From positions 1 through 64,000 of the IMG/VR virus record IMGVR_UViG_3300020172_001601: a stretch of DNA of 64,000 nucleotides; one strand, 5' to 3'. Position 1 is the first letter of the stretch; every line of letters starts with the position of its first letter. Of the stretch, positions 1-21,170 are shown piece by piece. A program made the position numbers and the translations under genes. The notes under the pieces were generated by a model, which saw only the letters and a list, made by a program, of their open reading frames with translations, was not told where the DNA came from and searched no databases.

Positions 1-594
1 CAAGGCAACCAAGGCAGACAGGGATTCCAAGGCAACCAGGGTTTTGCCGGTAATCAGGGCGTACAAGGCACGCAAGGCAACCAGGGCTTCGTTGGCAACC
101 AAGGCGCTCAGGGCGCACAAGGAAACCAAGGTTTCGTCGGCAATCAGGGTGCGCAGGGTCCGCAAGGCAACCAAGGTCGTCAAGGTAATCAAGGAAATCA
201 AGGCACACAAGGCAACCAGGGTTTTGTCGGTAATCAAGGCGCTCAGGGCGCACAAGGAAACCAAGGCGCTCAAGGTACGCAAGGTACTCAAGGATTCCAG
301 GGCAACCTTGGAAACCAGGGCAACCAAGGTTTTATTGGAAACCAAGGCAACCAAGGCGCACAAGGCACTGCGATGACATCGCAAAACTTTAGTTTCACTA
401 ATGCGAACTTGTCGTCTGGTGTATACACGGCAAACCATAACTCTGGTCGTCAGTATTGGACTGTGGAAGTATATGACAACAACAATAGGTTGGTTATGCC
501 TGACAGTATAACTTGTACCAACACCAATAACTTGGCAATTGATTTGACGACATTCGGAGTAATCACAGGCACTTGGACAGCGAGGTTATCATAA
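1..594 (+). CDS. Collagen-like (Gly-X-Gln) fibre protein, C-terminal part (5' truncated by window)
   Basis: Frame 1 from base 1 reads QGNQGRQGFQGNQGFAGNQG... with no stop and runs into the listed ORF 373..594, which is its C-terminal beta-rich domain. Confidence 0.9.
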   Translation, partial: QGNQGRQGFQGNQGFAGNQGVQGTQGNQGFVGNQGAQGAQGNQGFVGNQGAQGPQGNQGRQGNQGNQGTQGNQGFVGNQGAQGAQGNQGAQGTQGTQGFQGNLGNQGNQGFIGNQGNQGAQGTAMTSQNFSFTNANLSSGVYTANHNSGRQYWTVEVYDNNNRLVMPDSITCTNTNNLAIDLTTFGVITGTWTARLS

Positions 595-595
595 T

Positions 596-1966
596 ATGAG
601 AATAGGATCATTCCAATTCGCAGGGACACGTCTAAGGGACGCCTCAACAATCAACCTTACGAACGTAAGCACTAGCTTGACTATTGCTGGTTCGTATCAC
701 TTGATTACGGTGTCTACTGGTGCGTGTACTTTGACGAGCATCAGCGGACCTGCCACAAACGGCACGACCGTTCAGTTTATTCTGACGACCGGCTCACAGA
801 ACTGCACCTTCAATACAGGTGGAAACATCACAGATGCCGTGACGCTCGCAGCGGGCGGCATGGTTTCGTATATGTATGACGGAACAGCATGGCTCATGCT
901 TCATACAGATGGTCCACAAGGCGCACAAGGAAACCAGGGAGTACAAGGATCACAGGGAAATCAGGGCTTTATAGGAAATCAAGGCAACCAAGGTCATCAA
1001 GGAAATCAAGGTAATCAGGGTTTCCAAGGCGCACAAGGATTCCAGGGTTTCCAAGGCTCACAAGGCAATCAAGGCTACCAAGGCAACCAAGGAAACCAAG
1101 GTCATCAAGGCAATCAAGGAAACCAGGGTTTCGTTGGCAACCAAGGCGCTCAAGGTCCACAAGGAAACCAGGGTTTCGTTGGCAATCAAGGCGCTCAAGG
1201 CCCGCAAGGAAATCAGGGCTTCGTCGGCAACCAGGGTGCGCAAGGCGCACAAGGAGTTCAAGGCAACCAGGGCTTCGTCGGCAACCAAGGAAACCAAGGT
1301 AATCAAGGCAACCAAGGAACCCAGGGCTTCCAAGGCGCACAAGGCTTTCAAGGCAATCAGGGATTCGTCGGAAACCAAGGAAATCAAGGCGCTCAAGGCA
1401 CCCAAGGCGCACAAGGCAACCAAGGTAATCAAGGCTTCGTCGGCAACCAAGGAAATCAGGGCAATCAAGGAAACCAAGGATTCCAAGGAAACCAAGGAAA
1501 TCAAGGAAATCAAGGTAATCAAGGTTTCCAGGGCAACCAAGGAAATCAAGGAAATCAAGGTAATCAAGGCTTCGTCGGCAACCAAGGAAACCAGGGAAAT
1601 CAAGGCAATCAAGGCTTCCAAGGAAACCAAGGCTTTGTTGGAAATCAAGGTCCGCAGGGCTTCCAGGGCAACCAAGGCGCACAGGGAAATCAGGGCAACC
1701 AGGGCAATCAGGGATTTGTTGGCAACCAAGGTACGTTTGCTTGGAATTTAGCTGGGGCCTTTACTACGTTTAACAATGCCAGCTTATCTGGCTCGACGTT
1801 CTCGTATACTCACAGCCGAGCGGTCGATTGTGCCTTCGTGGTATATGATAACAATAACATAGAAATCATCCCGGCAGCGATTACCCGAACTTCTACCTCT
1901 CAGGTGACGATAGATTTACAGGGCTTTACACCGTTAACGGGGACATGGACATTGGTAGTATTGTAA
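596..1966 (+). CDS. Collagen-like (Gly-X-Gln) fibre protein
   Basis: About 90 consecutive G-X-Y triplets (GNQ/GFQ/GAQ/GFV) between N- and C-terminal beta-rich domains; C-terminal domain resembles that of the upstream gene. Confidence 0.9.
   Translation: MRIGSFQFAGTRLRDASTINLTNVSTSLTIAGSYHLITVSTGACTLTSISGPATNGTTVQFILTTGSQNCTFNTGGNITDAVTLAAGGMVSYMYDGTAWLMLHTDGPQGAQGNQGVQGSQGNQGFIGNQGNQGHQGNQGNQGFQGAQGFQGFQGSQGNQGYQGNQGNQGHQGNQGNQGFVGNQGAQGPQGNQGFVGNQGAQGPQGNQGFVGNQGAQGAQGVQGNQGFVGNQGNQGNQGNQGTQGFQGAQGFQGNQGFVGNQGNQGAQGTQGAQGNQGNQGFVGNQGNQGNQGNQGFQGNQGNQGNQGNQGFQGNQGNQGNQGNQGFVGNQGNQGNQGNQGFQGNQGFVGNQGPQGFQGNQGAQGNQGNQGNQGFVGNQGTFAWNLAGAFTTFNNASLSGSTFSYTHSRAVDCAFVVYDNNNIEIIPAAITRTSTSQVTIDLQGFTPLTGTWTLVVL
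911..1729 (+). repeat. 9-nt degenerate coding repeat (ggN aaY caR) encoding the collagen triple-helix region
   Basis: Direct reading of the sequence; period of 9 nt. Confidence 0.9.
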
Positions 1967-3190
1967 ATGAAAATCTCGATCTTTACACCAACGCATAAGC
2001 CGGTCTATCTCGACCGGCTTTTTCGTTCTCTTCAAGAACAGACATATTCAAATTGGGAATGGGTAATTGTTCCCAATAATGGTGCAGTAGTTGAGCCAAT
2101 TGATGATGAGCGAGTGAAGATATTTCCTTGCAATGATTCAGATAACATTGGTTTTCTAAAACGATTTGCTGCTGGCAAAGCCACTGGTGAAGTTGTTGTT
2201 GAAGTCGATCATGACGACGAGCTTTTCTCAACTGCCATTGAAGAATGTGCGAATGCTTTTGCGGACCCCACTGTTGATTTTGCATATTCCAATTGCTGTG
2301 ATGTGCGAGAGAATTATGTCCCTCGTTGTTTCGGTCCAGAATGGGGTTGGATCAATCGTGTTTGCAAATTCAAGAATCATGATTTGATTGAAACTGTTTC
2401 GTTCCCGCCAGACCCCGCTTCAATTAGCAAAATATGGTACGCTCCGAATCACTTCCGGGCGTGGCGTAAAGAGTTCTATGATCGTATTGGCGGTCATGAC
2501 GCCTCTTTGGATGTGTTGGATGACCAGGATATTATGTGTCGCACATATATTCAGGGCAAAATGTTCCACATCGACAAGCCACTTTATGTTTATCATTTGC
2601 ACCAGGAAAACACCTGCTATGGCGAGAAGAATGCCAAGATTCAAGAAGGCACGTTGATGCTTCACGACAAGTACATCTACCAACTTGTCGAACGATGGTG
2701 CGATCTGAACAATTTGCGCAAAATTGACTTATGCGGTGGTCACAGCAAGCCCGAAGGTTATGAAAGCGTCGATCTCGAACGTGGCGACATACAAGCAGAC
2801 TTGAATGGGCGATGGCCTTTTGAAGATGGTTCGGTAGGCGTGTTTCGTGCGCATGATGCTCTCGAACACTTGAAAGACCCAATCAATACGATGAAGGAAG
2901 CATATCGGTGTCTGGCTCCAGACGGTTGGTTCTTGACTCAAACGCCGTCTACAGATGGTCGTGGGGCCTTCCAAGACCCAACGCACGTTAGTTTCTGGAA
3001 CAGCAATAGTTTCTGGTATTACACCCGTGCAGAGCAGGCGAAGTACATCAATACTCCGGCTCGTTTTCAATTGAATCGCATCAAGAATTTCTTCCCAAGC
3101 GATTGGCATCAGTTCCACAATATCATGTACGTCAAAGCAGATTTGCTGAAGCTCACTGATACTCGGATTCCTGGTGGAGTAGAAATCTGA
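1967..3190 (+). CDS. GT2 glycosyltransferase fused to a class I SAM-methyltransferase-like domain
   Basis: N-terminal ISIFTPT...SLQEQTYSNWEWVIV and VDHDD (DxD); C-terminal IDLCGG...ADLN..WPF...HDALEHL...GAFQDPTH. Confidence 0.85.
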   Translation: MKISIFTPTHKPVYLDRLFRSLQEQTYSNWEWVIVPNNGAVVEPIDDERVKIFPCNDSDNIGFLKRFAAGKATGEVVVEVDHDDELFSTAIEECANAFADPTVDFAYSNCCDVRENYVPRCFGPEWGWINRVCKFKNHDLIETVSFPPDPASISKIWYAPNHFRAWRKEFYDRIGGHDASLDVLDDQDIMCRTYIQGKMFHIDKPLYVYHLHQENTCYGEKNAKIQEGTLMLHDKYIYQLVERWCDLNNLRKIDLCGGHSKPEGYESVDLERGDIQADLNGRWPFEDGSVGVFRAHDALEHLKDPINTMKEAYRCLAPDGWFLTQTPSTDGRGAFQDPTHVSFWNSNSFWYYTRAEQAKYINTPARFQLNRIKNFFPSDWHQFHNIMYVKADLLKLTDTRIPGGVEI

Positions 3191-3228
3191 TTGTAAAGCA
3201 AAATAAATACTTGCTGCACGTCTTGGCC

Positions 3229-3257
3229 TTTATTCAATCTTTGGCTTGGTCTATAAT
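3229..3257 (+). promoter_or_regulatory. Sigma70-like promoter TTTATT-N17-TATAAT
   Basis: Perfect TATAAT with 17-nt spacing, upstream of an AAGGAG RBS and the AAA ATPase. Confidence 0.6.
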
Positions 3258-3285
3258 CCCCTGACCTCGAACAAGGAGTTGTCAT

Positions 3286-4371
3286 ATGTCGAAATCCGAC
3301 AGCCAAGAACTAAATGAAATTCTGAAGAACGCCCCAGATACTCCGTCGTATGACGGAGATGGCGACTCAAATCCATGTTTCAGCAATGATATTGCTGTCT
3401 GTGGTGAACCCGTCGCCTCATTTGATCGTGGTCTGGGTGGATATTGCCAGTGGTCCACATCGGACGGCAAGCGATATATTCCATCCAGCAAGACGGCCAA
3501 GAAGCTCACGCCGGGCGTCTACGATATTCTTCACAGTAACACAATCGGTTTGTATTTTGAACAGATTCCAGTTCTCACAACTGGTTTGATCCGGTTTCCA
3601 GAAACCAATTCCGATAAGGTCGTATCTGAAATTCAGAAGTTCTGGAAAAAGGAAAACATCTTCCGCAGTTACAACCTGACTTACAAGCGTGGCATTATTC
3701 TGTGGGGACCGCCAGGATCGGGCAAGTCTTGCACAATCCAGTTGATTATGCGTGACGTTGTAGAGCGTGGCGGCGTGGTCATCAAGTTTACGCATCCCAC
3801 ATTATTCCTTGAAGGCATTCGCAAGTTCCGAGAGATTCAGCCGGACACGCCTGTTGTCGTATTGATGGAAGATATTGACAGCATCTTGGAGATGTACTCT
3901 GAGAGTGAAGTTCTCAATATCCTCGATGGCGTGAATCAGATCGAGAAGGTTGTCTTCTTGGCGACGACCAATTACCCAGAAAAGCTGGGCGCTCGTATTG
4001 TCAATCGTCCTTCTCGATTTGACAAGCGATTTAAGATCGGCCATCCGAATGCCGAAAGCCGTCGTATTTACTTTGAATACATCATCGGCAAAGACAAGGT
4101 GAAGGCTCTCAAGATCAATCTGGATCAGTGGGTTGAAGACACTGAAGAATTCAGTATTGCTCACTTGAAGGAGTTGTTCACTGCGGTTGTTATTCTCGGC
4201 GACGAATATGAGGATGCCATCGAATCTCTTTCTTTGATGAAAGAAGATAAGCCTGATTCATCCAATGATGAAGCACGGAAGTCAATGGGATTCGGAAATG
4301 GCAAGAAGGCTCGCCGTCACAAGTTGACTGCTGATGATTCATTCATGAAAGAATTAAGGGAGATGGAATGA
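3286..4371 (+). CDS. AAA+ ATPase (BCS1-like single AAA module)
   Basis: YKRGIILWGPPGSGKS (Walker A), LMEDID (Walker B), LNILDG, ATTNYPEKL..RIVNRPSRFD (SRH). Confidence 0.9.
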   Translation: MSKSDSQELNEILKNAPDTPSYDGDGDSNPCFSNDIAVCGEPVASFDRGLGGYCQWSTSDGKRYIPSSKTAKKLTPGVYDILHSNTIGLYFEQIPVLTTGLIRFPETNSDKVVSEIQKFWKKENIFRSYNLTYKRGIILWGPPGSGKSCTIQLIMRDVVERGGVVIKFTHPTLFLEGIRKFREIQPDTPVVVLMEDIDSILEMYSESEVLNILDGVNQIEKVVFLATTNYPEKLGARIVNRPSRFDKRFKIGHPNAESRRIYFEYIIGKDKVKALKINLDQWVEDTEEFSIAHLKELFTAVVILGDEYEDAIESLSLMKEDKPDSSNDEARKSMGFGNGKKARRHKLTADDSFMKELREME

Positions 4372-4913
4372 GCGAGTCAATTCTGATCTCGACCGAGTAT
4401 ACCTTGGTCATTCATACAGATGGTTTTTCGGATGCTTTCGCCAAGAAGCTCTGTGCATATTGCACAGGCTTCGTGGATGAAACCGATAGCGATCTCGAAT
4501 TTTCTGATCTGTATTATCTGGAAGAGAACATCGAAGATGATGAGTCTCCGAGAGGTCAAGTGGCCGAAGAAAAGAATCCGTTTTATGGATTTGTCGGCCA
4601 GAGGCTAGATGAAGACCAGATTTATTCTCCTTGCTGTGTCTGGCTCAATAAGCGATACGGATATAACGCCAATGGCGAATACGCCGTGCTGACCGAGAAG
4701 AATTTCGACGAATACAACTTCCCGGCTCCTTTGAGCGTTGGTATTTTCTTCGATGTGGTTCCAGAGCCGGAGCATATCTCGAAGATCAAGGAGCGGGCCG
4801 TGAAGTTTTTCGAGAAGGTCTGGCCTAAGCTCAACGATGGGGCTAAAAAGGTTACGGTCGAAGACTTTCGGTTGGTAATCCACACCAAGTACGGGGAAGA
4901 AGTGGCGGTGTGA
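4368..4913 (+). CDS. Hypothetical acidic protein
   Basis: ATGA-coupled to the upstream gene; 181 aa. Confidence 0.75.
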   Translation: MSESILISTEYTLVIHTDGFSDAFAKKLCAYCTGFVDETDSDLEFSDLYYLEENIEDDESPRGQVAEEKNPFYGFVGQRLDEDQIYSPCCVWLNKRYGYNANGEYAVLTEKNFDEYNFPAPLSVGIFFDVVPEPEHISKIKERAVKFFEKVWPKLNDGAKKVTVEDFRLVIHTKYGEEVAV

Positions 4914-4967
4914 TTTTACGTTTGAATCGGTTTTGTGGTATGGTGTAGGTAGTTCAAGGAGAACACT

Positions 4968-5840
4968 ATGCACCATCAGCAATTGTGGGAGATGCCTCTT
5001 GCACGTCGATATTTTGAATATCTCGTTCGGTTCTTCGTATTTTACAGCATCGGCATGTACCTCCTTGAGATGGAGGTTACAAAGGCTCATCATAGCGACG
5101 GATTCTGGCTCTTGAATGAGCGATTCGTCGCTATGTTTTTTACGGTGGAGTACCTTGTCCGATGGGCAATATCGGACAACAAACGGCACTTCCCGTTCAA
5201 ACTATTGTCGATAATTGACCTGATTGCCATCGTGCCTTTTTATGTCGGGTTCTTTGTTGACGATCACACGCTTGATATAATTCGCACGCTTCGAGTGTTG
5301 CGAATGTTCAAGCTGGTCAGGTACAGTCCTGCCCTGATGAACGTCATGGAAGGCATAAAAAAGGTCAAAAGCGAACTGTATGTCGTTGGATATATTGTTT
5401 GTATTGTTGTGGTGTTTAGTTCGGTTTTAATCCTGCAATTTGAAAAGGACGCACAGCCAGACAAGTTCGACAAGCCGTCCGATGCTTTGTGGTGGTCCTT
5501 CGTGACGATGGCCACAGTTGGCTATGGTGATTTGGCTCCCGTGACCCTTGCCGGTCGGGTAGTAGCGATCTTTACTATGGTCATTGGCATTGGTATATTC
5601 GGTGTGTTCGTGAGTCTCATCGGCAGCGCCCTTATAGTGACGTGGAAGGAACAACAAGATGAGCAAAGAAAATCTAATGCAAGCCTGCAATCTAAGCCTC
5701 CAGATGAAGGGCTTGGACGGCGATCCGAAATACAAGAAGCGACTGAAGTGGGAAATCGAGGAAATCTTAGCCAGGAACAAGTCGGACTATTTTTGGAACC
5801 TGTACAGCAGTCGAACACGCTATCCGCAAAATCAAAATAA
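4968..5840 (+). CDS. Voltage-gated 6-TM potassium channel (KvAP-like)
   Basis: Selectivity filter TVGYGD, pore helix DALWWSFVTMAT, S4 RTLRVLRMFKLVR, S3 IIDLIAIVPFY; AAGGAG RBS. Confidence 0.92.
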   Translation: MHHQQLWEMPLARRYFEYLVRFFVFYSIGMYLLEMEVTKAHHSDGFWLLNERFVAMFFTVEYLVRWAISDNKRHFPFKLLSIIDLIAIVPFYVGFFVDDHTLDIIRTLRVLRMFKLVRYSPALMNVMEGIKKVKSELYVVGYIVCIVVVFSSVLILQFEKDAQPDKFDKPSDALWWSFVTMATVGYGDLAPVTLAGRVVAIFTMVIGIGIFGVFVSLIGSALIVTWKEQQDEQRKSNASLQSKPPDEGLGRRSEIQEATEVGNRGNLSQEQVGLFLEPVQQSNTLSAKSK

Positions 5841-8460
5841 TCTGTTGATCTGTTGGCTTTTGGGCATCGTCCCCGATCACAATATCGACCAAGAGCCTAA
5901 GTGCGAATACGGCGAATATCCCGACATTGACGTGGATTATTTGCCTATTGTTCGAGACTACCTGAAGACCGTGTGGGCCAAAGACACATTTGGTTCTGAC
6001 TATGTTTGTAATATCGGCAACTACACCACGTTCGGCATTAAGTCGGCTCTGATCGACATGGCCCGTGTTCACGGAGAAAGCCGAGAAGAAGTCCAGGCTC
6101 TCACAAAGAATCTCGACGCCAAGGACGATGAAGGCAAGGTTCTCACTTGGGATGCAGCGATGAAGCTGTATCCTGAGTTGAAGAAGTATTGTGAAATAGA
6201 TGATACTCACAAGCGTATTGCTGACGCAGCCAAGCGACTTCTTCACCGCAATCGAGGCATGGGCGTTCATGCTGGTGGTTTGATTATTGCCAATGCTCCT
6301 CTCTCTGATCTCGTTCCGCTCGTCAAGCGTAAAGACAGTCCACAAGCATCTGCATGGGTGGAAGGGCTGCATGGTCAGGACTTAGGCCCTATGGGTCTAG
6401 TTAAGTTTGACTTGTTGGTTATTTCCAATCTGCTTCAGATTGCTCGTTGCTGTGAGATGGTCAAGAAGCGGCATGGTTTAGTTGGCATTTGCAATAAGCC
6501 CGGCGAACCTGACTGGACCGATGTTCCAGCTTGGCGTGATGACCCCACATCATTGGCTATGGCCAATATTGGTGACTTGAAGTGTATCTTCCAATTTGAT
6601 TCTGAAGGTATGCGTGGACTCGTTCGTGCGGGTGGCGTAGACCGATTTGAAGACTTGGTTGCATACACCGCTTTGTTCCGTCCAGGTCCGCTCGGCATGA
6701 AGATGCAGGAGCGATACGTCGAACGTAAGCGTGGTCGTGAAAAGTATACACTTCACCCGCTGGTGAAGCCTATTCTTGATAAGACTTACGGAGTTTTGAC
6801 TTATCAAGAACAAATTATGCGTATCCTCAACGTGGTAGGTGAAATCCCGTTGAAGGATTGCGAATTGGTTCGTAAGGCGATCAGCAAGAAGAAGGTTGAA
6901 GGGTTCATCAAATACAAGGAGATGTTCGTTCTCAACGGCCAGAGAAACCTGGGCTGCAACGAAGAAGAAATCAATCACTTGTGGAATCAGATTGAAGCCT
7001 TCGCTGAATACGGTTTCAATCTCAGTCACGCCGTCGCATACACCTATATCTCGGCATGGTTGTTGTATCTCAAGGCTCACTATCCTCATGAGTTCTATGC
7101 TTCGATGCTGAGTTGTGAAACGCTCAGTGAGAAGATTAAAGAATACAAGATGGAAGCCAAGATTCACGGCGTCGATATGAATCGTTTGGACATCAATAAG
7201 TCCGATGTGAATTTCGATCTCCAAGGCGACATGATCTATTTCGGCCTGAGCAACATCAAGGGTTTAGGCGAGGCTCCGGCCAAGCGTATTGTTGCCGCTC
7301 AACCTTACAAGTCTTTTGAAGACTTCGTAACTCGGTTCGGCACAGATGCCAGCGTATTGAAGCCCATTTTGGGACTTCGATGTTTCCGTGATCGTGACCC
7401 TGTTACTTTGTGGAAGTTTGCTGAACACTTCAAGGATTGTGCCAAGAAGATTGAGGACAAGAAGAAGCGTTATCATGCGTCGATGATTAAATACGATCAA
7501 GAGTTCAAGGAACTCTTGCCGTTGGAAATCCGCACACTGGCTCAGTTGGAGAATGGACTGGACAATGCCTTCGATAGTGAAGGCTGGCGGGTTCAATGTG
7601 ACAAAGATGAAGAGATTGAAGTCGATAAGGAAGTGCTATGTGAGAAGGATTCCCCAGGGGCCACAGAGCGAGTAGTGGTGGAAGATATTGAGGTTGAAGG
7701 AACTGGTTTATATCTCCAGCGGGAAATCATTAAGTATTACCATGTCGGAAAAGTAAAAAAGACGTGGAATTTGTGGAAAGAATTACGCAAACTATGGCAA
7801 CGTAGGAAAAAGAGCATTGAGCGATACCAGAGCATCGAACGGGGCAACCTGCCGACGCTTCTCAATTTTGACGCTAATGCGTGGGATATTGACGAAGACT
7901 TGATGAAAGAATTCCGTGATCCGGTTGCCTGTGAGGAGAAGTATTACGGATTCGCCTGGATTCACGATCTGGAACGTAGCCCGGATTACAGGGGAAACCT
8001 TACTTTTGCCGATCTGAAGAATAGCATTGATGCTGTTGTTGGCCCGGTTGAACTTCGGGTCAAAAAGGTGGTAAAAACTCAAAGTAAAAAGCGAAAAGAG
8101 TTTACATACTACCAAGTTCTAGCGGAAGACGTGACCGGACAAGAGAATAGGATCAACGTATGGCCAGACGATTGGGAATGGTGGCATACAGAGTTTGGCT
8201 GGGAAGAAGTCGGCGGGAAATCGAAATTCACCGCTGGTAACTTACTTAGAGTAAGGCTCCAGCCTCCGACTGGTGGTTTCAATACTTTCACCCTGGAAAG
8301 CAATCAGGTTGGCAAGTGGCGAAGCCAAAAGCGGTATCACGACAAAGCTGACGATCCACGAGTGTTCGTTATGCAGAAGGGACAGAAAGAAGAAGAAAAA
8401 TTTCTGAGTGATGATGAGGCGATGGAGCAGTTCACAAACTGCACTATGGAACAAAAATGA
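5659..8460 (+). CDS. dnaE: DNA polymerase III alpha subunit (family C), lacking the N-terminal PHP domain
   Basis: PDIDVD, GVHAGG, GLVKFDLL, IFQFDS, ALFRPGP, TYGVLTYQEQIM, FAEYGFNLSHAVAY, YLKAHYP, GLSNIKGLG. Confidence 0.93.
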   Translation: MSKENLMQACNLSLQMKGLDGDPKYKKRLKWEIEEILARNKSDYFWNLYSSRTRYPQNQNNLLICWLLGIVPDHNIDQEPKCEYGEYPDIDVDYLPIVRDYLKTVWAKDTFGSDYVCNIGNYTTFGIKSALIDMARVHGESREEVQALTKNLDAKDDEGKVLTWDAAMKLYPELKKYCEIDDTHKRIADAAKRLLHRNRGMGVHAGGLIIANAPLSDLVPLVKRKDSPQASAWVEGLHGQDLGPMGLVKFDLLVISNLLQIARCCEMVKKRHGLVGICNKPGEPDWTDVPAWRDDPTSLAMANIGDLKCIFQFDSEGMRGLVRAGGVDRFEDLVAYTALFRPGPLGMKMQERYVERKRGREKYTLHPLVKPILDKTYGVLTYQEQIMRILNVVGEIPLKDCELVRKAISKKKVEGFIKYKEMFVLNGQRNLGCNEEEINHLWNQIEAFAEYGFNLSHAVAYTYISAWLLYLKAHYPHEFYASMLSCETLSEKIKEYKMEAKIHGVDMNRLDINKSDVNFDLQGDMIYFGLSNIKGLGEAPAKRIVAAQPYKSFEDFVTRFGTDASVLKPILGLRCFRDRDPVTLWKFAEHFKDCAKKIEDKKKRYHASMIKYDQEFKELLPLEIRTLAQLENGLDNAFDSEGWRVQCDKDEEIEVDKEVLCEKDSPGATERVVVEDIEVEGTGLYLQREIIKYYHVGKVKKTWNLWKELRKLWQRRKKSIERYQSIERGNLPTLLNFDANAWDIDEDLMKEFRDPVACEEKYYGFAWIHDLERSPDYRGNLTFADLKNSIDAVVGPVELRVKKVVKTQSKKRKEFTYYQVLAEDVTGQENRINVWPDDWEWWHTEFGWEEVGGKSKFTAGNLLRVRLQPPTGGFNTFTLESNQVGKWRSQKRYHDKADDPRVFVMQKGQKEEEKFLSDDEAMEQFTNCTMEQK

Positions 8461-11287: not shown

Positions 11288-11717
11288 GCGAGTAATAGAA
11301 CTGGTTATCGTGGGCCTGTGGCTGACCATAGCTGTAGTGCTGTTTATTCACTACCAAAAGGACACCAACAAGACTGTCCCCATCCCTGACAAGTTGGTTG
11401 CTCCAACTGTGCCGGAATCCGAAAAGGGAAAGCGATTTGATGTTCGCAAGGTAACTGTTTTGCGTGGAGATTCTTTCGACATAACCATGAAGGATGAGGC
11501 GAATACCCGAATCCTGGGCAAGTTGCCCGTCATGGCCACTGAGAATGCGAAAGGAAAAGTGCTGGACCTGTTGAACCACAGCACGAATCCGAAAGTTGTT
11601 TTGCGTGAGAAGCAACCGGATGGCCGCTGGACTATTGATTTCTTTTTCACAAATAATGAAGGAAAAGAAATGAATTTGGTCGAGTGGCTGAGTTCCAATA
11701 ATCTGGTATACAAATGA
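11277..11717 (+). CDS. Membrane-anchored protein, possibly a degenerate thermonuclease (SNase-like) fold
   Basis: N-terminal TM; VTVLRGDSFDI resembles SNase V..DGDT; GRWTIDFF and NLVEWL..NNLV follow the SNase layout. Confidence 0.45.
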   Translation: MERRRVIELVIVGLWLTIAVVLFIHYQKDTNKTVPIPDKLVAPTVPESEKGKRFDVRKVTVLRGDSFDITMKDEANTRILGKLPVMATENAKGKVLDLLNHSTNPKVVLREKQPDGRWTIDFFFTNNEGKEMNLVEWLSSNNLVYK

Positions 11718-12904
11718 ACGAACAAGAGGGTGTAGTGACCGAACAACGGCGTCGTCGGTCCTCGGATGATCTGGCAATAGAAGCAGCGGAAGAGGATGGT
11801 AGTAGACAGGAGCCGCAGAAGCGTGGACGAGAAAATGTTCTCTCCAAAACTCAGCGGCTCTTATCGGAAAGGATCAAGGCGGCTCTTACGGAAAAGGGCA
11901 TGGCTAAGATCGCTATATTTACGCATCCTTGCCCTGACCCCGATGCCATTGGGTCACAAATGGGGCTTGCTTGGCTGCTTCGCAAAGCATATGAGGGTGT
12001 AGATGTTGACTGTTTTTACGATGGTCATCTTTCACACCCGCAGAACCAGCGAATGTGCAATTTGCTGGACCCGGAGTTGAAGCTCTATACAGACTGTCAA
12101 CCCGACGAATATGATCTTCGTGTATCTGTAGATACCGTGCCAGCGCACGCTAGTTGTCCAGATAACACGACATTCGATTTGGTTATTGACCACCATAGAG
12201 AAATACCAAATGGTGGATTCAAGGGCCTGTTCTTAAACCTCAAGGGTGGCAGTTGTTGTGCCACCATCTATCAACTCATCAAGGCTCATGGCCTTGGCTT
12301 CGAGGAAGACAATGATGCTGATTCCAAGGTAGCCACGGCTTTGCTGGTGGGCATCATCACTGATACTGAATATCAAACTTCAGACGATACCACTGATCTC
12401 GAACACGAAGCCTATCGAGAGTTATTTGAATATCGTAACTCTGCACACCTGAAGGAAATCACCCGATATAAACAGCCCCGTGAATGGGTTCAGGCTCGTG
12501 CATGTGTGGCTCAGAAGGCCCATGATCGCATTAAGGACGGCGTATTGATTCACGGTATTGGCTTCATCACTGGAAGCAATCGTGATTTGATCGCTGCTGT
12601 AGCCGATGATATGCTTTCCTGGGAGAACGTCGAAACCGCTGTGGCTTTTGCTGTAGTTGATGGCGACCGCATTGAAGGTTCAGTTCGCAGCATGAATGCT
12701 GCCCTTGCCGTACCAACACTCTGTAAAGAGTTGGGCCACGCTCTTGGTGGCTCTGGTGGCGGTAAATTGGGCAAAGGTGCATATGCCTATGCACTTGGCA
12801 GTTGTGCCAACGATGGCGAAATGGACGAAAGCATTAAAGAGAAGTTGTGGGAATTCATTCACGAACGAGAACTCAAGAGGCTCCACAAAATCATCAAGAA
12901 GTAG
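11714..12904 (+). CDS. DHH/DHHA1 phosphoesterase (NrnA-like)
   Basis: THPCPDPDAIGS, VDT, IDHH, GIITDT, GSVRS, glycine-rich GGSGGG. Confidence 0.9.
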   Translation: MNEQEGVVTEQRRRRSSDDLAIEAAEEDGSRQEPQKRGRENVLSKTQRLLSERIKAALTEKGMAKIAIFTHPCPDPDAIGSQMGLAWLLRKAYEGVDVDCFYDGHLSHPQNQRMCNLLDPELKLYTDCQPDEYDLRVSVDTVPAHASCPDNTTFDLVIDHHREIPNGGFKGLFLNLKGGSCCATIYQLIKAHGLGFEEDNDADSKVATALLVGIITDTEYQTSDDTTDLEHEAYRELFEYRNSAHLKEITRYKQPREWVQARACVAQKAHDRIKDGVLIHGIGFITGSNRDLIAAVADDMLSWENVETAVAFAVVDGDRIEGSVRSMNAALAVPTLCKELGHALGGSGGGKLGKGAYAYALGSCANDGEMDESIKEKLWEFIHERELKRLHKIIKK

Positions 12905-12908
12905 GAAT

Positions 12909-13205
12909 ATGAACTTCAACGAGTATTACCACTACTATCTCAGCTTGCATCAAAACAAGACTTGTCGCCGCTTGCACGTTTTAGGGCAATTGGCGACAAT
13001 CTCGTTTTTGATTTTCATTATCTACATGGGCGGGTGGTATTGGCTTTTGCTGCCCTTGTTGCCTTTTGTAGTGTATCCATTTGCTTGGAGTGGTCACTAC
13101 TTCTTTGAGCATAACGAACCTGCCGCTTTCAAGAACCCTATATGGGCGAAGCTGTGTGATTGGCGAATGTTATTCGACATTATCAGAGGCAGGATCGAAC
13201 TGTGA
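12909..13205 (+). CDS. DUF962/Mpo1-like membrane protein
   Basis: YYLSLHQNKTCRRLHVLG, FAWSGHYFFEHNEPAAFKNP; start re-called to ATG 12909. Confidence 0.85.
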   Translation: MNFNEYYHYYLSLHQNKTCRRLHVLGQLATISFLIFIIYMGGWYWLLLPLLPFVVYPFAWSGHYFFEHNEPAAFKNPIWAKLCDWRMLFDIIRGRIEL

Positions 13206-16059: not shown

Positions 16060-17202
16060 ATGAGTTCCGTTGTCGAATTTCTAAAGCGATCTGCCGAACG
16101 TAACGGATTTGCCCGTGAGCGGTTTGAGGAACGCAAAATCCCTACTGACCATAGCAACTTAATCGTTATGCCGTTCTTTGGCGATTTAAGAAGCACTATG
16201 GTTATGTCCAGTCTATTGCTTCAACGATATAGACAAGAAGTCAAAAACTCTAAGTATTTCATTCTTGCTTCTTGGCCAGGGTTCCAGGGCATATTCCCTT
16301 ATGTGGATGAATATTGGGCCATCAATGATGAGGCTCACATTAAGAAGTTCTACGAACAGTCTGATGGTTTTAGGAACAAGTCCGACTTAACAACGATTTA
16401 TACTCGCAATCTCAATGAGTTCTTTCGTGACGTTGTTGATTACAAAGAATTGATCCCATATTACCAGAATGGTTTCACAAGTCAGTTCTTTGAAAAGTTC
16501 AGCACCACTAAAAGGTTCCTTCCTTTCGTGCCGTCCTCGACAGCATTAGGCAAAGACTTTAATCGGGAACTATCCACAAAGGCTGGCTACAAGGTATTCA
16601 TTCATCCTTCGATATTCGCCAAGCAATGGCATATCGGCAGAAGTCAAAATGTTCGCACTAAACGAGAGTTCTGGACTGAACTGGTTGAGAAGCTCTTGGC
16701 GAACAATTATGTCCCTGTTATTTGGCAAAATTATCTTTCCTATGATATTTCGCAAGAATTCGTAGGTCGATGCCTATTTATAGGAGAGACAGATGTGGTT
16801 CGTGTCTTATCGGCGATGCGGACCACGGGCTGTGTTCTGGACGTGTTCAATGGTTTGTCACGTCTGGCAATATTGGCCCGATGTCCATTCGTAGCCGTTG
16901 ATGAGCGTTCTAGGTATACGAACCTCAAAGAATACGAGATTGACGACTTGTGTGCCTCGGACATTCCGAAGGAATATATTTTCACTTTTTCCACTATAAT
17001 ATCAGACGGCAACCCATACAACTGGAGCCAGGATATTTTCCAGTCGATATTGAAAAAGTTGGATAATTTCCTGCCTGAGTTAAACCGAGACGAGTGGCCT
17101 TCGACGGGTGAAACCACTGAGGTCGTACCGTATAAAGAGTATGTGCGAACCAACGAGCGAATCAAGCTCGGCACACGACTTTTGAAGATTACTAGAGATT
17201 GA
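16060..17202 (+). CDS. GT-B/GT9-like protein, paralog of 14891..16057
   Basis: FGD...YFILASWPG...YVDEYW, LSRLAILARCP; GGAGG RBS before ATG 16060. Confidence 0.5.
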   Translation: MSSVVEFLKRSAERNGFARERFEERKIPTDHSNLIVMPFFGDLRSTMVMSSLLLQRYRQEVKNSKYFILASWPGFQGIFPYVDEYWAINDEAHIKKFYEQSDGFRNKSDLTTIYTRNLNEFFRDVVDYKELIPYYQNGFTSQFFEKFSTTKRFLPFVPSSTALGKDFNRELSTKAGYKVFIHPSIFAKQWHIGRSQNVRTKREFWTELVEKLLANNYVPVIWQNYLSYDISQEFVGRCLFIGETDVVRVLSAMRTTGCVLDVFNGLSRLAILARCPFVAVDERSRYTNLKEYEIDDLCASDIPKEYIFTFSTIISDGNPYNWSQDIFQSILKKLDNFLPELNRDEWPSTGETTEVVPYKEYVRTNERIKLGTRLLKITRD

Positions 17203-17216
17203 TTAAGGAGCCTAAA

Positions 17217-17492
17217 ATGGCGTGCAAAGTTGAACTGCGTGATCTGCCACCTAATGCAAGCTGGCAGGAAAGAGATATTGCCTTCAAGAAGATGTTTTCA
17301 GTCTTCAAGAAACAGGTTGCTGAGGCAGGAATACTGCAACAGTGTAAGAAGCACGAATTTTATGAAAGTCCTGGCGAAAAGAAACGCCGCAAGAAGAAGG
17401 AATCCCATAACGCACGGCTCAAGGCCAAGCTCCGGGAAAGTTTCCCAGAGCGAAAGCCTAAGAAAGATACCAAGAACAAAGGTGATAAATGA
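17217..17492 (+). CDS. rpsU: Ribosomal protein bS21 homolog
   Basis: FKKQVAEAGILQQCKKHEFYESPGEKKRRKK matches the bS21 core FKR...AGIL...R.RE.YEKP...R.RK; AAGGAG RBS. Confidence 0.85.
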   Translation: MACKVELRDLPPNASWQERDIAFKKMFSVFKKQVAEAGILQQCKKHEFYESPGEKKRRKKKESHNARLKAKLRESFPERKPKKDTKNKGDK

Positions 17493-17788: not shown

Positions 17789-18292
17789 ATGAAACCAAAA
17801 GCCGCACCCCTTGCGATAGTTCCCGTAGCCGATATTCCACAGGCGGTGGATGTCCCTGTCGATAATTTACTTCCTGTCTTTCGCACCATCACGCAGATGG
17901 AACAACTTTGCACAGCACAAGAAGGAATTGGCCTATCAGCGGTTCAGGTAGGCATTCCCTGGAAGTTATTTATCGTCCAAAGAGGCCACGGTTACGAATA
18001 TTACATCAACTGTGAGTATAATGGCATTGGTGAAAAACAAAAATCTATCGAAGGATGTTTATCTCTTCGAGACTCGCAGGGCAATTTGCGACGATTCGAG
18101 GTTGACCGATATTCCTCGATTGCCGTAAAGGGCAAGCAACTGAAAATATCATCCGACTCCCCTTCTTTGGTTTTGGATGATGTGGATCACATCGAACACG
18201 ATCTATATGCAGTTGTTTTTCAGCACGAGATAGATCACCACAATGATGTCCTTATCAGCGACATTGGCACCGAAGTCGAACTCACGAGGTAA
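17789..18292 (+). CDS. def: Peptide deformylase
   Basis: All three signature motifs: GIGLSAVQVG, EGCLS, QHEIDH. Confidence 0.95.
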   Translation: MKPKAAPLAIVPVADIPQAVDVPVDNLLPVFRTITQMEQLCTAQEGIGLSAVQVGIPWKLFIVQRGHGYEYYINCEYNGIGEKQKSIEGCLSLRDSQGNLRRFEVDRYSSIAVKGKQLKISSDSPSLVLDDVDHIEHDLYAVVFQHEIDHHNDVLISDIGTEVELTR

Positions 18293-19700: not shown

Positions 19701-19986
19701 TCTCAGTTTCCTAGCTCGACAATGGGAAACTGTTGAACTGCCCAAAGAGAAGAAGTATTTGCTCAGATACTTCAATACGCCGCTTCAAGCGGCCTTCTTA
19801 AAGTACGTCCACATCTTTGGAGATTACTCTAATTTCGTTGACCATACTGGCCTAGCAAGTAGCCCTCGATGGCTCGCAATCCTGTACAATAGATTGCAGA
19901 CATTGCAAACACTACACCGTGAAGCTAGGGCTAATATGGATATGACGGCCCTGGCTCACATTGAATCAGGGAATTACAAATTATGA
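19669..19986 (+). CDS. Hypothetical protein
   Basis: Fills the gap; ATGA-coupled to IDO; start uncertain. Confidence 0.6.
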   Translation: MRASILAQNRDLSFLARQWETVELPKEKKYLLRYFNTPLQAAFLKYVHIFGDYSNFVDHTGLASSPRWLAILYNRLQTLQTLHREARANMDMTALAHIESGNYKL

Positions 19987-21170
19987 GCATGTGGGATATT
20001 ACAGATCGTGGGTTTCTAGGCGTGGCCGATCCACTCGTTTCGCTCACGGCTAAAAACGAAAAGTATATTCCAGCCGCCGTTAGGTTGGAAAATATTGCTT
20101 CTGTTTTGCCGTATTGGATTGAAGAAAGATGTATACGAGAAGAACTCGTACACAACCTGCGTGAGATTGCCCCGTTGATTGATGGTGAGTTTTTACTGAA
20201 TCAAGATGAGGTAAAAACCGAACGGCTGATGCACCTGTATTCCTATATGGCCAGTGCTTATGTCTTCGCTAGACATGAGAATGCCGCCACGAGAATACCG
20301 TCAGAGATCGCTGTTCCACTTACTATGGTCGCTGAAAAGCTAGACCGCAAACCGATCCTTTCTTACGCTTCATATTGTTTAACCAATTGGGAGCGTATAG
20401 ACCCTAATGATGAAATCAAGTTGGGCAATATAAAATTGCTTACAAACTTTTCATCGCCAGAGTCGGGAAAATCAGATGAGGACTGGTTCATTCTGGTTCA
20501 TGTCGATATTGAAAATTGTGCTGCCGATGGTGTTGGTGCCTGTAAACAACTTTTGGAAAATCCCTGGAAGCAAGGCAACGAAGTTCACAATATTGTCACG
20601 GCCAACGATATTCTTACCAAGATTTTCGTCAGCTTGGCGAAGATGAATAAGACAATGGCAAAGATGCCAGATGAATGCAGTCCAGACAATTACTTCCGAT
20701 GGGTGAGGCCGTATATCTTCTCGTTCAATAACATGGTCTATAAAGGCTGTTTCCAAGATCAGCCAATTACCTGTCGAGGGGAAACCGGGGCGCAAAGTAG
20801 CATCATTCCTGCTTTTTTGGCGGCTCTCGAAATCAACCATCAGGATTCCATGCTGACGCATCACCTTATGGAGATGCGTGATTACATGCCAGCCCCTCAC
20901 CGACGATTTCTTTCAAATCTTGTGATCCAGACAGCGAATAATTCCGTTGTGGGGGTAGGTCTGCGAGATTTTGCTCGGCGTGACCCGGTGTTGAAGGACA
21001 TCTACAACGAGTGCGTCAATGAGATTATTGCCTTCCGAAACAAGCATTTCGAGTACGCAGTCAACTATATCTCCAAGAAGGTTGAAAATCCTTCCGGGAC
21101 GGGCGGTACGCCCTATGTCCCGTGGCTGAAACAACTTAGAGAAGAAACCGAGTCACACCTGATCCCGTAA
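19983..21170 (+). CDS. Indoleamine 2,3-dioxygenase family heme enzyme
   Basis: P.LSYASYCL.NW, DEDWFILVH, VRPYI, RGETGAQSS, MRDYMP..HRRFL, FRNKH (heme His), GTGGT. Confidence 0.92.
   Translation: MSMWDITDRGFLGVADPLVSLTAKNEKYIPAAVRLENIASVLPYWIEERCIREELVHNLREIAPLIDGEFLLNQDEVKTERLMHLYSYMASAYVFARHENAATRIPSEIAVPLTMVAEKLDRKPILSYASYCLTNWERIDPNDEIKLGNIKLLTNFSSPESGKSDEDWFILVHVDIENCAADGVGACKQLLENPWKQGNEVHNIVTANDILTKIFVSLAKMNKTMAKMPDECSPDNYFRWVRPYIFSFNNMVYKGCFQDQPITCRGETGAQSSIIPAFLAALEINHQDSMLTHHLMEMRDYMPAPHRRFLSNLVIQTANNSVVGVGLRDFARRDPVLKDIYNECVNEIIAFRNKHFEYAVNYISKKVENPSGTGGTPYVPWLKQLREETESHLIP

What the first reader, a model, noticed from the sequence alone, without database searches (positions are those of the whole stretch)
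5659..6000. DnaE lacks the PHP domain and the GRGS and FERF palm motifs: a likely split polymerase
Seen: catalytic PDIDVD lies only about 90 aa from the start. Where DnaEs read GxGRGS.AGSLVAY.LGIT...LLFERF, this one reads RYPQNQNNLLICWLLGIV...EPKCEYGEY. Established: the GS and Arg residues of those motifs contact the dNTP phosphates. Inference: a separate gene elsewhere supplies PHP, GRGS and FERF, giving an intein-free two-chain replicase with a vestigial duplicated segment. Alternatively the active site is rewired.
Basis: partly seen in the sequence, partly recalled or inferred. Interest (0 to 1): 0.7.

Follow-up and report, generated by a model that had tools for sequence, protein, structure and literature searches.

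The report
Two-gene split DnaE polymerase, huge phage
This freshwater huge phage encodes its DnaE-type DNA polymerase as two separate proteins, so that the nucleotide-binding loop and the proofreading domain sit on one chain and the metal-binding catalytic residues on the other, without inteins.

Summary
ORF 5659-8460 (+) encodes a 933-aa DnaE-like protein with no PHP domain. PDIDVD is at residues 88-93. The GxGRGS loop and the FERF segment are cleanly deleted.

The window is the first 64 kb of a truncated 340-kb huge-phage contig. All relatives with enough upstream flank encode a separate ~465-aa protein 3-15 kb upstream on the same strand. That protein carries an intact PHP motif set, GPGRGS and LLFSRF, and ends just before where PDxDxD would be.

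Pfam PF07733 is divided exactly: positions 2-98 on the N chain and 100-259 on the C chain.

The window's own partner is not on its record. It lies on an abutting IMG/VR contig (L023). Both contigs break in the same collagen-like repeat gene, and both are found without differences, at depths 13.7 and 13.1, in the probable source run.

A complex model puts the N chain's strand before RGS against the C chain's catalytic strand (ipSAE 0.84, best control 0.00).

There are no inteins at the ends. The "vestigial" overlap segment is conserved, so it is probably functional.

A minimal split Pol III has been described in other jumbo phages, so I rate this a new variant of a known kind.

The parts
5659..8460 (+). 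DnaE-C gene: the C-terminal chain (933 aa) of a split C-family DNA polymerase. It holds the palm from the catalytic strand onward, thumb, fingers, HhH and an OB-fold C-terminal region.
   Evidence: ORF and translation. Pfam domains. PDB sequence matches to Pol III alpha of Thermus aquaticus and E. coli, E 3.5e-80 and 1.9e-68. AF2 model with pLDDT 80 and Foldseek top hits 7pu7, 4iqj, 3e0d, 2hnh. More than 120 clusters of full-length relatives.
5725..5913 (+). Residues 23-85: retained copy of the segment that precedes the catalytic strand in DnaE (helices equivalent to YxxRLxxEL...YFL and SLVxYxLGIT), but without the strand-GRGS loop and without FERF. Probably a docking module.
   Evidence: Alignments A1, A3 and BLASTP to the fused LR756511.1 protein. 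Invariant R28, W31, E32, E35, N58, N60, N61. Mean majority fraction 0.68. pLDDT 83-92. Residues 31-62 are in the predicted interface.
5815..5844 (+). RYPQNQNNLL: the place where GPGRGSxAGS (the NTP-binding GS loop) is deleted. N58, N60 and N61 are invariant in the family.
5896..5919 (+). PKCEYGEY: the place where the LLFERF/LLFSRF segment is deleted.
5920..5937 (+). PDIDVD catalytic strand. D89 and D91 align with E. coli D401 and D403. D93 is also invariant.
   Evidence: HMMER alignment to 2hnh. Invariance. D93-L95 contact N-chain residues 399-403 in the complex model.
6403..6411 (+). K249-F250-D251. D251 aligns with the third catalytic carboxylate, E. coli D555, and K249 with K553.
   Evidence: alignment (VKFD). 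Invariant.
6436..6942 (+). Finger domain (PF17657). It includes R405-K406, which align with the Arg pair in LLRRAMGKK of T. aquaticus (R766/R767).
7168..7347 (+). Helix-hairpin-helix DNA-binding module (PF14579).
8041..8373 (+). C-terminal beta-rich region, probably an OB fold.
   Evidence: Secondary structure. Weak Foldseek matches to OB folds (E about 0.1, probability 0.97-1.0). phrog_405 alignment reaches profile position 1081 of 1190.
4968..5840 (+). Ion-channel gene inserted just upstream of DnaE-C. Its last 182 nt overlap the first 60 codons of DnaE-C in another frame. It is not part of the polymerase, but it explains why gene callers shorten DnaE-C in relatives.
   Evidence: Absent in the 95% relative. 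Present in the 90% relative, where DnaE-C was called as 867 aa.
1..1966 (+). Collagen-like (GNQ)n tail-fibre gene array at the contig start. This is the assembly break that separates the window from the contig carrying the partner gene (L023:9962-11362, PHP-N, 466 aa).

Best explanation
The gene encodes the C-terminal chain of an intein-free, two-chain DnaE-type (C-family) DNA polymerase of a freshwater huge phage.

The N chain is about 466 aa and is encoded about 15 kb upstream on the same strand, on the abutting contig. It carries a PHP domain with all nine metal-ligand positions, the helix and strand 1 of the Pol-beta-like palm, the GPGRGS nucleotide-triphosphate-binding loop, and the LLFSRF segment.

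The C chain is the window ORF. It carries the catalytic strand (D89, D91), the third carboxylate (D251), thumb, fingers, HhH and an OB region.

Inferred: the two chains associate non-covalently. Strand 1 of the N chain pairs with the catalytic strand of the C chain, so that the active site is composite, and the PHP domain proofreads.

[quoted passage not shown] Both chains keep a degenerate copy of the overlap. This points to fission of a fused ancestor like the 1179-aa protein of LR756511.1, followed by complementary loss. The C chain's retained N-terminal module now probably serves as a docking element.
For: The Pfam domain PF07733 is divided exactly between the two chains:
- N chain, profile positions 2-98.
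- C chain, profile positions 100-259.

The N-chain family has the features expected of the missing half:
- There are more than 120 clusters, about 465 aa long.
- R404-G405-S406 and L428-F433 are invariant, as are the PHP ligands.
- The protein ends about 28 aa after LLFSRF.

The two genes co-occur:
- In 8 of 8 IMG/VR loci with at least 9 kb of upstream flank, and in further loci, the N gene lies 3-9 kb upstream on the same strand.
- In the 95%-identical relative the gap is 15 kb.
- Nine N/C cluster pairs share a longest-contig length.

The window's own partner is on the abutting contig L023:
- L023 ends, and the window starts, at the same point of the relative's map (L022 positions 5170 and 5129), inside one collagen-like ORF.
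- In the probable source run X1, L023:9800-11600 is matched with 0 differences by a contig of depth 13.7, and window 1561-6000 by a contig of depth 13.1.
- In run X3 both lie at depth about 2-5.

The complex model supports binding but does not show it:
- ipSAE 0.84 against a best control of 0.00. That mark was reached by 58 of 80 solved complexes and 2 of 110 mismatched pairs.
- The runs agree in at least 94% of contacts, and the partner's pLDDT is at least 87.
- C-chain residues 93-95 contact N-chain residues 399-403.
- C-chain residues 454-464 contact N-chain residues 402-409 and 421-428.

Other support:
- The monomer AF2 model is unconfident exactly in the palm (residues 85-95, 120-124, 198-248).
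- The fused relative aligns collinearly with both chains.
- No intein domains are found at the ends.
Against: - No biochemical data exist.
- The partner gene is not on the window's own record. Its assignment rests on contig abutment, identical presence and matching depth in two runs, not on a spanning read.
- The complex score can come from the model's memory of single-chain DnaE structures, and my own alignments were used.
- N58, N60 and N61 are invariant exactly where the GS loop was deleted. This could mean a substitute function within the C chain.
- The tree does not place the fused protein outside the split clade, although monophyly of the split forms is not rejected (p-AU 0.129).
- Relatives also carry a ~440-aa PolA-like gene, so the role as sole replicase is not shown.
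Confidence: 0.8

Rival explanations
1. The C chain is a self-sufficient polymerase with a rewired nucleotide-binding site, for example using the invariant NQNN loop and finger residues. The ~465-aa PHP protein would then work on its own as an exonuclease or phosphoesterase.
For: N58, N60 and N61 are invariant at the site of the deleted GS loop. The catalytic carboxylates, K249, and R405/K406 in the fingers are intact.
Against: The N chain keeps RGS and LLFSRF invariant, plus 100 residues of palm that a free PHP nuclease would not need. The two genes co-occur strictly and in the same orientation. The complex model reconstitutes the canonical sheet. The palm of the monomer model is poorly defined.
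Confidence: 0.1
2. The two products are joined after translation, by trans-splicing with a split intein as in cyanobacterial DnaE.
For: The family is rich in cis-inteins.
Against: No intein or Hint domain is found at the C end of the N chain or the N end of the C chain. The N chain has only about 28 residues after LLFSRF. The first 85 residues of the C chain are homologous to DnaE itself. Splicing would also duplicate the overlap segment.
Confidence: 0.02
3. The gene is a decaying remnant or a non-catalytic paralogue: a truncated DnaE with no polymerase function.
For: The PHP domain and two nucleotide-binding motifs are missing.
Against: The reading frame is intact at 933 aa. It is conserved at 55-97% identity over more than 100 clusters, with all catalytic residues invariant. 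No other DnaE is present in the record.
Confidence: 0.03
4. The finding is an annotation or assembly artefact: a wrong start codon, a frameshift, or a chimeric contig hides the PHP part.
For: The contig is a fragment (69% complete), and the upstream ORF overlaps the start by 182 nt.
Against: A stop lies 6 codons upstream of the ATG. The upstream ORF is an ion channel. Independent assemblies from many samples show the same gene start. The Logan contig of the source run matches with 0 differences.
Confidence: 0.01

Closest known systems
'Minimal' split DNA polymerase III alpha of group 2.2 (T4-like) jumbo phages, predicted by Iyer et al. 2021, Viruses 13:63 (PMC7824862)
   Same: A phage C-family catalytic module encoded as two separate proteins by distant genes. 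The split runs between an N-terminal NTP-binding unit and a C-terminal Mg- and template-binding unit. It was predicted to reconstitute one enzyme.
   Different: That version is minimal, with no PHP or other Pol III domains. It accompanies a family B polymerase and was read as an ancestral form. Here the two chains together make a full-size DnaE (PHP, palm, thumb, fingers, HhH, OB). No family B polymerase is found. Overlapping relics on both chains point to fission of a fused ancestor. I could not obtain that paper's accessions, so I could not test sequence relatedness.
Fused 1179-aa DnaE of uncultured huge phage LR756511.1 (595 kb)
   Same: It is the nearest single-chain relative: 55% identical to the N chain and 48% to the C chain, collinear with both. 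It shares the clade-specific insert before GPGRGS and the C-terminal region.
   Different: It is one polypeptide with a single copy of the overlap segment, and with GPGRGS, LLFSRF and PDVDVD all in cis.
Two-gene DnaE of actinobacteriophages (Microbacterium phage Krampus gp56/gp57; Arthrobacter phage Wollypog gp56/gp59, with an HNH endonuclease gene between them)
   Same: A phage DnaE encoded in two genes without inteins.
   Different: The split lies between PHP and palm. The C part keeps GPARGS, ERF and PDIDLD in one chain, so the polymerase active site is not divided. The genes are adjacent.
Cyanobacterial split DnaE (DnaE-n/DnaE-c) joined by a split intein
   Same: A replicative DnaE encoded by two distant genes.
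   Different: The cyanobacterial halves carry intein halves and are ligated by trans-splicing (Caspi et al. 2003, cited in PMC3919608). No intein is found at the ends here. From my own knowledge, the cyanobacterial split site is further downstream.
Canonical bacterial and phage DnaE (E. coli and T. aquaticus Pol III alpha; Peebs, Bigswole and Nate phage DnaE)
   Same: Same fold and catalytic residues. Viral C-family polymerases normally run from PHP through the fingers in one chain (PMC3201878).
   Different: They are a single chain. The GS loop and the catalytic Asp residues are in cis.

Membership tests
C-family DNA polymerase, DnaE type (Pol III alpha) | Pol-beta-like palm with three catalytic carboxylates (E. 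coli D401, D403, D555) | tested here: met
   D89, D91 and D251 align with them and are invariant in 53 sequences.
C-family DNA polymerase, DnaE type (Pol III alpha) | GS (GxGRGS) nucleotide-binding loop in the same chain as the catalytic strand | tested here: not met
   The loop is deleted in the window protein. It is present on the separate N chain.
C-family DNA polymerase, DnaE type (Pol III alpha) | N-terminal PHP domain | tested here: not met
   There is no PF02811 in the protein or in the 340-kb record. PHP is on the separate N chain, with all nine ligand positions present (motif definition from PMC12926913).
C-family DNA polymerase, DnaE type (Pol III alpha) | Finger domain and HhH module; overall Pol III alpha fold | tested here: met
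   PF17657 at E 8.8e-37 and PF14579 at E 1.5e-13. Foldseek top hits are all Pol III alpha, E down to 1.1e-26.
C-family DNA polymerase, DnaE type (Pol III alpha) | DNA polymerase activity | not testable with these tools
   Needs biochemistry.
Split-intein DnaE (cyanobacterial type) | N-intein at the end of the N half and C-intein at the start of the C half | tested here: not met
   No intein or Hint family is found in either chain. The ends are DnaE-homologous sequence.
Minimal split Pol III alpha of group 2.2 jumbo phages (Iyer et al. 2021) | Split between the NTP-binding and the Mg-binding subdomains, in two distant genes | tested here: met
   PF07733 positions 2-98 against 100-259. The genes are 3-15 kb apart.
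Minimal split Pol III alpha of group 2.2 jumbo phages (Iyer et al. 2021) | Minimal architecture (no PHP or other Pol III domains), together with a family B polymerase | tested here: not met
   PHP, fingers, HhH and an OB region are present. No PF00136 is found in the record or in four relatives.
Two-chain obligate heterodimeric polymerase (proposed here) | Physical association of the N and C chains with a composite active site | tested here: inconclusive
   The model supports binding but does not show it: ipSAE 0.84 against a best control of 0.00; that mark was reached by 58 of 80 solved complexes and 2 of 110 mismatched pairs; contacts agree in at least 94%; partner pLDDT at least 87. The score may reflect memory of single-chain DnaE structures.
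Two-chain obligate heterodimeric polymerase (proposed here) | Partner gene present in the same genome | tested here: met
   It is met in relatives. For this phage it is met by contig abutment plus identical sequence and equal depth in the source run. No single read or contig spans the repeat.

The most novel reading that the evidence does not exclude
A large clade of freshwater and sediment huge phages replicates with an obligate heterodimeric C-family polymerase whose active site is built from two polypeptides: the GS loop, an Arg and the PHP proofreader on one, the metal ligands and DNA-binding domains on the other. It arose by fission with overlap of a fused DnaE. The retained, remodelled overlap module of the C chain (invariant NQNN loop) has become a new subunit-docking element.
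Probability: 0.6. Interest if true: 0.6.

Novelty: new variant of a known kind. Interest (0 to 1): 0.55.

Why it matters
Replicative C-family polymerases are treated as single catalytic chains. Viral ones are described as running from PHP through the fingers in one protein (PMC3201878).

Here a full-size DnaE is divided inside its nucleotidyltransferase core, between the nucleotide-binding loop and the metal-binding strand. There is no intein to rejoin the parts, and the arrangement is conserved over hundreds of sequence clusters. This has four consequences:

- It marks a natural, tolerated split site in the C-family-specific insertion. That is useful for thinking about how the palm folds and for making split polymerases.
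- It gives a worked example of gene fission with complementary degeneration of an overlap.
- It extends the earlier prediction of a minimal split Pol III in T4-like jumbo phages to a complete, PHP-bearing enzyme.
- It has a practical annotation consequence. Both halves are labelled 'DNA polymerase III alpha' or 'hypothetical', the C half is often called too short, and fragmentary contigs look as if they had a defective polymerase.

Tried and rejected
- PHP search in the window's own record, by Pfam profile at E up to 10 and by tblastn with three N-chain proteins. Nothing was found, and I first read this as absence. It is explained by the contig break.
- The genome search on the 602-kb ENA contig of a 90% relative. 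The record is not held.
- Upstream ORF 4968-5840 as a possible PHP part or frameshifted N-terminus. Rejected: it is an ion channel.
- Direct overlap between the L023 end and the window start. No exact overlap, only collagen-repeat similarity of 65-75%. The abutment was instead shown through the relative's map.
- Direct BLASTP of the N-chain tail against the C-chain head. The result is weak (E 0.02 and 0.15, collinear). The homology of the overlap rests on both aligning to fused DnaEs.
- Rooting the fission with a tree. The fused LR756511.1 protein groups with the split L032/L036 at 93/93 support on a long branch. The AU test does not reject monophyly of the split forms (p 0.129). The direction is argued from the relics, not from the tree.
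- Looking for cultured phages with the same split site. Bigswole, Nate and MT835885 are full length, and Krampus and Wollypog split elsewhere. The phages behind phrog_7513, phrog_13169 and phrog_12219 were not traced.
- Accessions of the Iyer et al. minimal split Pol III. No supplement is held.
- First attempt at look-up of sequencing runs failed because the machine was busy. The repeat succeeded.
- Beta-clamp search (PF02768) in the record found nothing. The conserved LPxLxxF motif at residues 731-737 as a clamp-binding site remains a guess.
Full report
**What is in the sequence**

The window is the first 64 kb of a 340,341-bp linear IMG/VR virus record that CheckV rates 69% complete. ORF 5659-8460 on the + strand encodes 933 aa. 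Pfam finds three domains: the second part of the Pol III alpha NTPase domain (PF07733, profile positions 100-259 of 260), the finger domain (PF17657) and HHH_6 (PF14579). There is no PHP.

The protein matches solved Pol III alpha chains from residue 86 on:
- Thermus aquaticus 2hpi, E 3.5e-80.
- E. coli 2hnh, E 1.9e-68.

In that alignment D89 and D91 fall on E. coli D401 and D403, and K249 and D251 fall on K553 and D555.

An AlphaFold model built on 53 relatives has mean pLDDT 80. Its 19 best Foldseek matches are all C-family polymerases.

PDIDVD is at residues 88-93, and the stretch before it reads RYPQNQNNLLICWLLGIV...EPKCEYGEY.

I aligned the protein with Streptomyces phage Peebs DnaE and with the fused DnaE of huge phage LR756511.1. 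Two clean deletions account for the difference: the GPGRGSxAGS loop and the LLFxRF segment. The flanking helices are kept.

A stop codon lies 6 codons upstream of the ATG. The upstream gene is an ion channel. A wrong start or a frameshift is therefore excluded.

**It is a family character**

More than 120 clusters at 90% identity, from metagenomes, encode full-length relatives that are 55-97% identical. None of them has PHP. The deletions are present in all 53 aligned members. The catalytic residues are invariant. More distant members at 46-54% identity have the same N-terminus.

**The partner**

I searched five related virus records for PHP. Each gave one hit. In four records it lies in a separate open frame a few kb upstream of the DnaE-like gene; the frame is about 470 aa in three of them and 875 aa in the fourth. 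In LR756511.1 it is fused to the polymerase (the open frame is 1183 codons; the ORF from its ATG is 1179 aa).

The separate proteins have this layout:
- a PHP domain;
- the first part of the palm, including GPGRGS and LLFSRF;
- an end about 28 residues after LLFSRF, just where PDxDxD would follow.

This N-chain family is as large as the C-chain family. R404-G405-S406, L428-F433 and the PHP ligand positions are invariant or nearly so.

Pfam places the N chain on PF07733 positions 2-98. That is the exact complement of positions 100-259 on the C chain.

In every locus with enough flank, the N gene is upstream of the C gene on the same strand. The distance is 3-9 kb in IMG/VR loci. It is 15 kb in the relative whose C chain is 95% identical.

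**Where this phage's own partner is**

The 340-kb record has no PHP or N-chain homologue. The window starts inside an array of collagen-like (GNQ)n tail-fibre genes.

On the map of the 95% relative, window position 1 corresponds to L022 position 5129. IMG/VR contig L023 carries an N-chain gene 97% identical in protein to that relative's. L023 ends at L022 position 5170, inside the same collagen-like ORF.

The sequencing runs agree:
- In run X1, the probable source sample (a freshwater metagenome), a Logan contig of depth 13.7 matches L023:9800-11600 with no differences.
- In the same run, a contig of depth 13.1 matches window 1561-6000 with no differences.
- In run X3, a second run of the same study, both regions lie at depth about 2-5.

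I conclude that L023 is the left neighbour of the window. The N-chain gene (L023:9962-11362, 466 aa) lies about 15 kb upstream of the C-chain gene. No single contig spans the repeat, so this is a strong inference, not proof.

**How it most likely works**

The following is shown by computation:
- In C-family enzymes that region holds a lineage-specific insertion of about 40 residues (PMC11646218).
- The N chain holds the proofreading-type PHP motif set (definition in PMC12926913).
- The C chain holds the metal ligands, the finger pair R405/K406, HhH and a probable OB fold.

A complex model of the full N chain with C-chain residues 1-530 supports binding but does not show it. The scores and caveats are:
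- ipSAE 0.84 against 0.00 for the best of three controls.
- That mark was reached by 58 of 80 solved complexes and 2 of 110 mismatched pairs.
- The runs agree in at least 94% of contacts, and the partner's pLDDT is at least 87.
- My own alignments were used, and memory of single-chain DnaE structures may contribute to the score.

Its best-defined contacts are:
- N-chain residues 399-403 (the strand before RGS) lie against C-chain D93-L95.
- The GS loop and LLFSRF lie against the FNLSH finger segment, residues 454-464.

The monomer model is unconfident exactly in the palm sheet.

The following is inferred:
- The chains form a non-covalent heterodimer with a composite active site.
- The N chain binds the triphosphate.
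- The C chain does the metal chemistry and binds DNA.
- PHP proofreads.

**The overlap segment**

C-chain residues 23-85 and N-chain residues of about 350-445 both align to one segment of fused DnaEs. Each chain keeps what the other has lost. The N-chain tail (FRNMDPLP) may be a degenerate copy of the catalytic strand (DIDVDYLP), but this is weakly supported.

The C-chain copy is conserved, folds confidently and lies in the predicted interface. It is therefore not vestigial, and I read it as a docking module.

This pattern fits fission of a fused ancestor followed by complementary degeneration. The tree does not settle the direction.

**Comparison with what is known**

- Viral C-family polymerases are described as single chains from PHP through the fingers (PMC3201878). 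The cultured phages I checked conform.
- Actinophages Krampus and Wollypog have two-gene DnaEs, but these are cut between PHP and palm, which leaves the active site in one chain.
- Cyanobacterial DnaE is split but is rejoined by a split intein. No intein is present at the ends here.
- The closest precedent is the 'minimal' Pol III alpha of T4-like jumbo phages, predicted to be split into NTP-binding and Mg-binding units encoded by distant genes (PMC7824862). The principle is the same. That version, however, lacks PHP and the other domains and accompanies a family B polymerase, which these phages lack.
- I found no paper describing the present full-size split. PHROGs does hold unannotated families whose ends coincide with it.

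**Verdict**

The split-polymerase interpretation is supported, with confidence about 0.8. The novelty rating is a new variant of a known kind. Interest is moderate to fairly high (0.55).

Noticed in passing
window 4968-5840 (+): A voltage-gated-type ion-channel gene (PF00520, PF07885) is inserted between the 181-aa gene and DnaE-C. It is absent in the 95% relative and present in the 90% relative. Its last 182 nt overlap the first 60 codons of DnaE-C in another frame, and gene callers then start DnaE-C 66 codons too late (867 aa).
   Followed up: partly
window 1-1966 (+); L023:18600-20390: An array of paralogous collagen-like (GNQ)n tail-fibre genes. IMG/VR and Logan assemblies from several samples all break here, which splits this phage's genome into separate records.
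   Followed up: yes
window 19983-21170 (+): A phage-encoded indoleamine 2,3-dioxygenase homologue (PF01231, E 2.8e-61), an unusual auxiliary gene for a phage.
   Followed up: no
window 17199-17492 (+) and 17789-18292 (+): Ribosomal protein S21 and peptide deformylase genes, with a ribbon-helix-helix protein between them. The same pair is present in the 95% relative.
   Followed up: no
window 11714-12904 (+), 12696-13205 (+), 29137-30768 (+): A DHH/DHHA1 phosphoesterase (RecJ/NrnA-like), an Mpo1-like protein and a thiamine-pyrophosphate enzyme (acetolactate-synthase-like).
   Followed up: no
L008, L010-L013 (C chain, about residue 456-460); P0159, P0193, P0196, P0201, P0216, L013, L033 (N chain): Many family members carry cis-inteins, some with homing endonuclease domains. 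In the C chain they sit in the FNLSH finger motif. Inteins also occur in the N chain. The window's copy has none.
   Followed up: partly
L020:1133-8222 (relative of the window's phage): A PrkA, DUF444 and SpoVR gene set and a ClpP protease lie upstream of the N-chain gene in the 95% relative.
   Followed up: no
G001:74868-75554, G005, G006, LR756511.1:393932-394588: Related huge phages also encode a short (~440 aa) family A polymerase-like protein. None was detected in the window's 340-kb record.
   Followed up: partly
window 7849-7869 (residues 731-737 of DnaE-C): A conserved LPxLxxF motif (P732, L734 and F737 invariant) resembles a sliding-clamp-binding motif. No beta-clamp gene was found in the record.
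   Followed up: partly
PHROGs phrog_7513, phrog_13169, phrog_12219: Reference-phage families of 461-463 aa match the whole N chain (one is labelled unknown function). A family of 823 aa starts exactly at PDIDVD. This suggests the same split exists in genomes already in public phage collections, without being annotated as such.
   Followed up: partly
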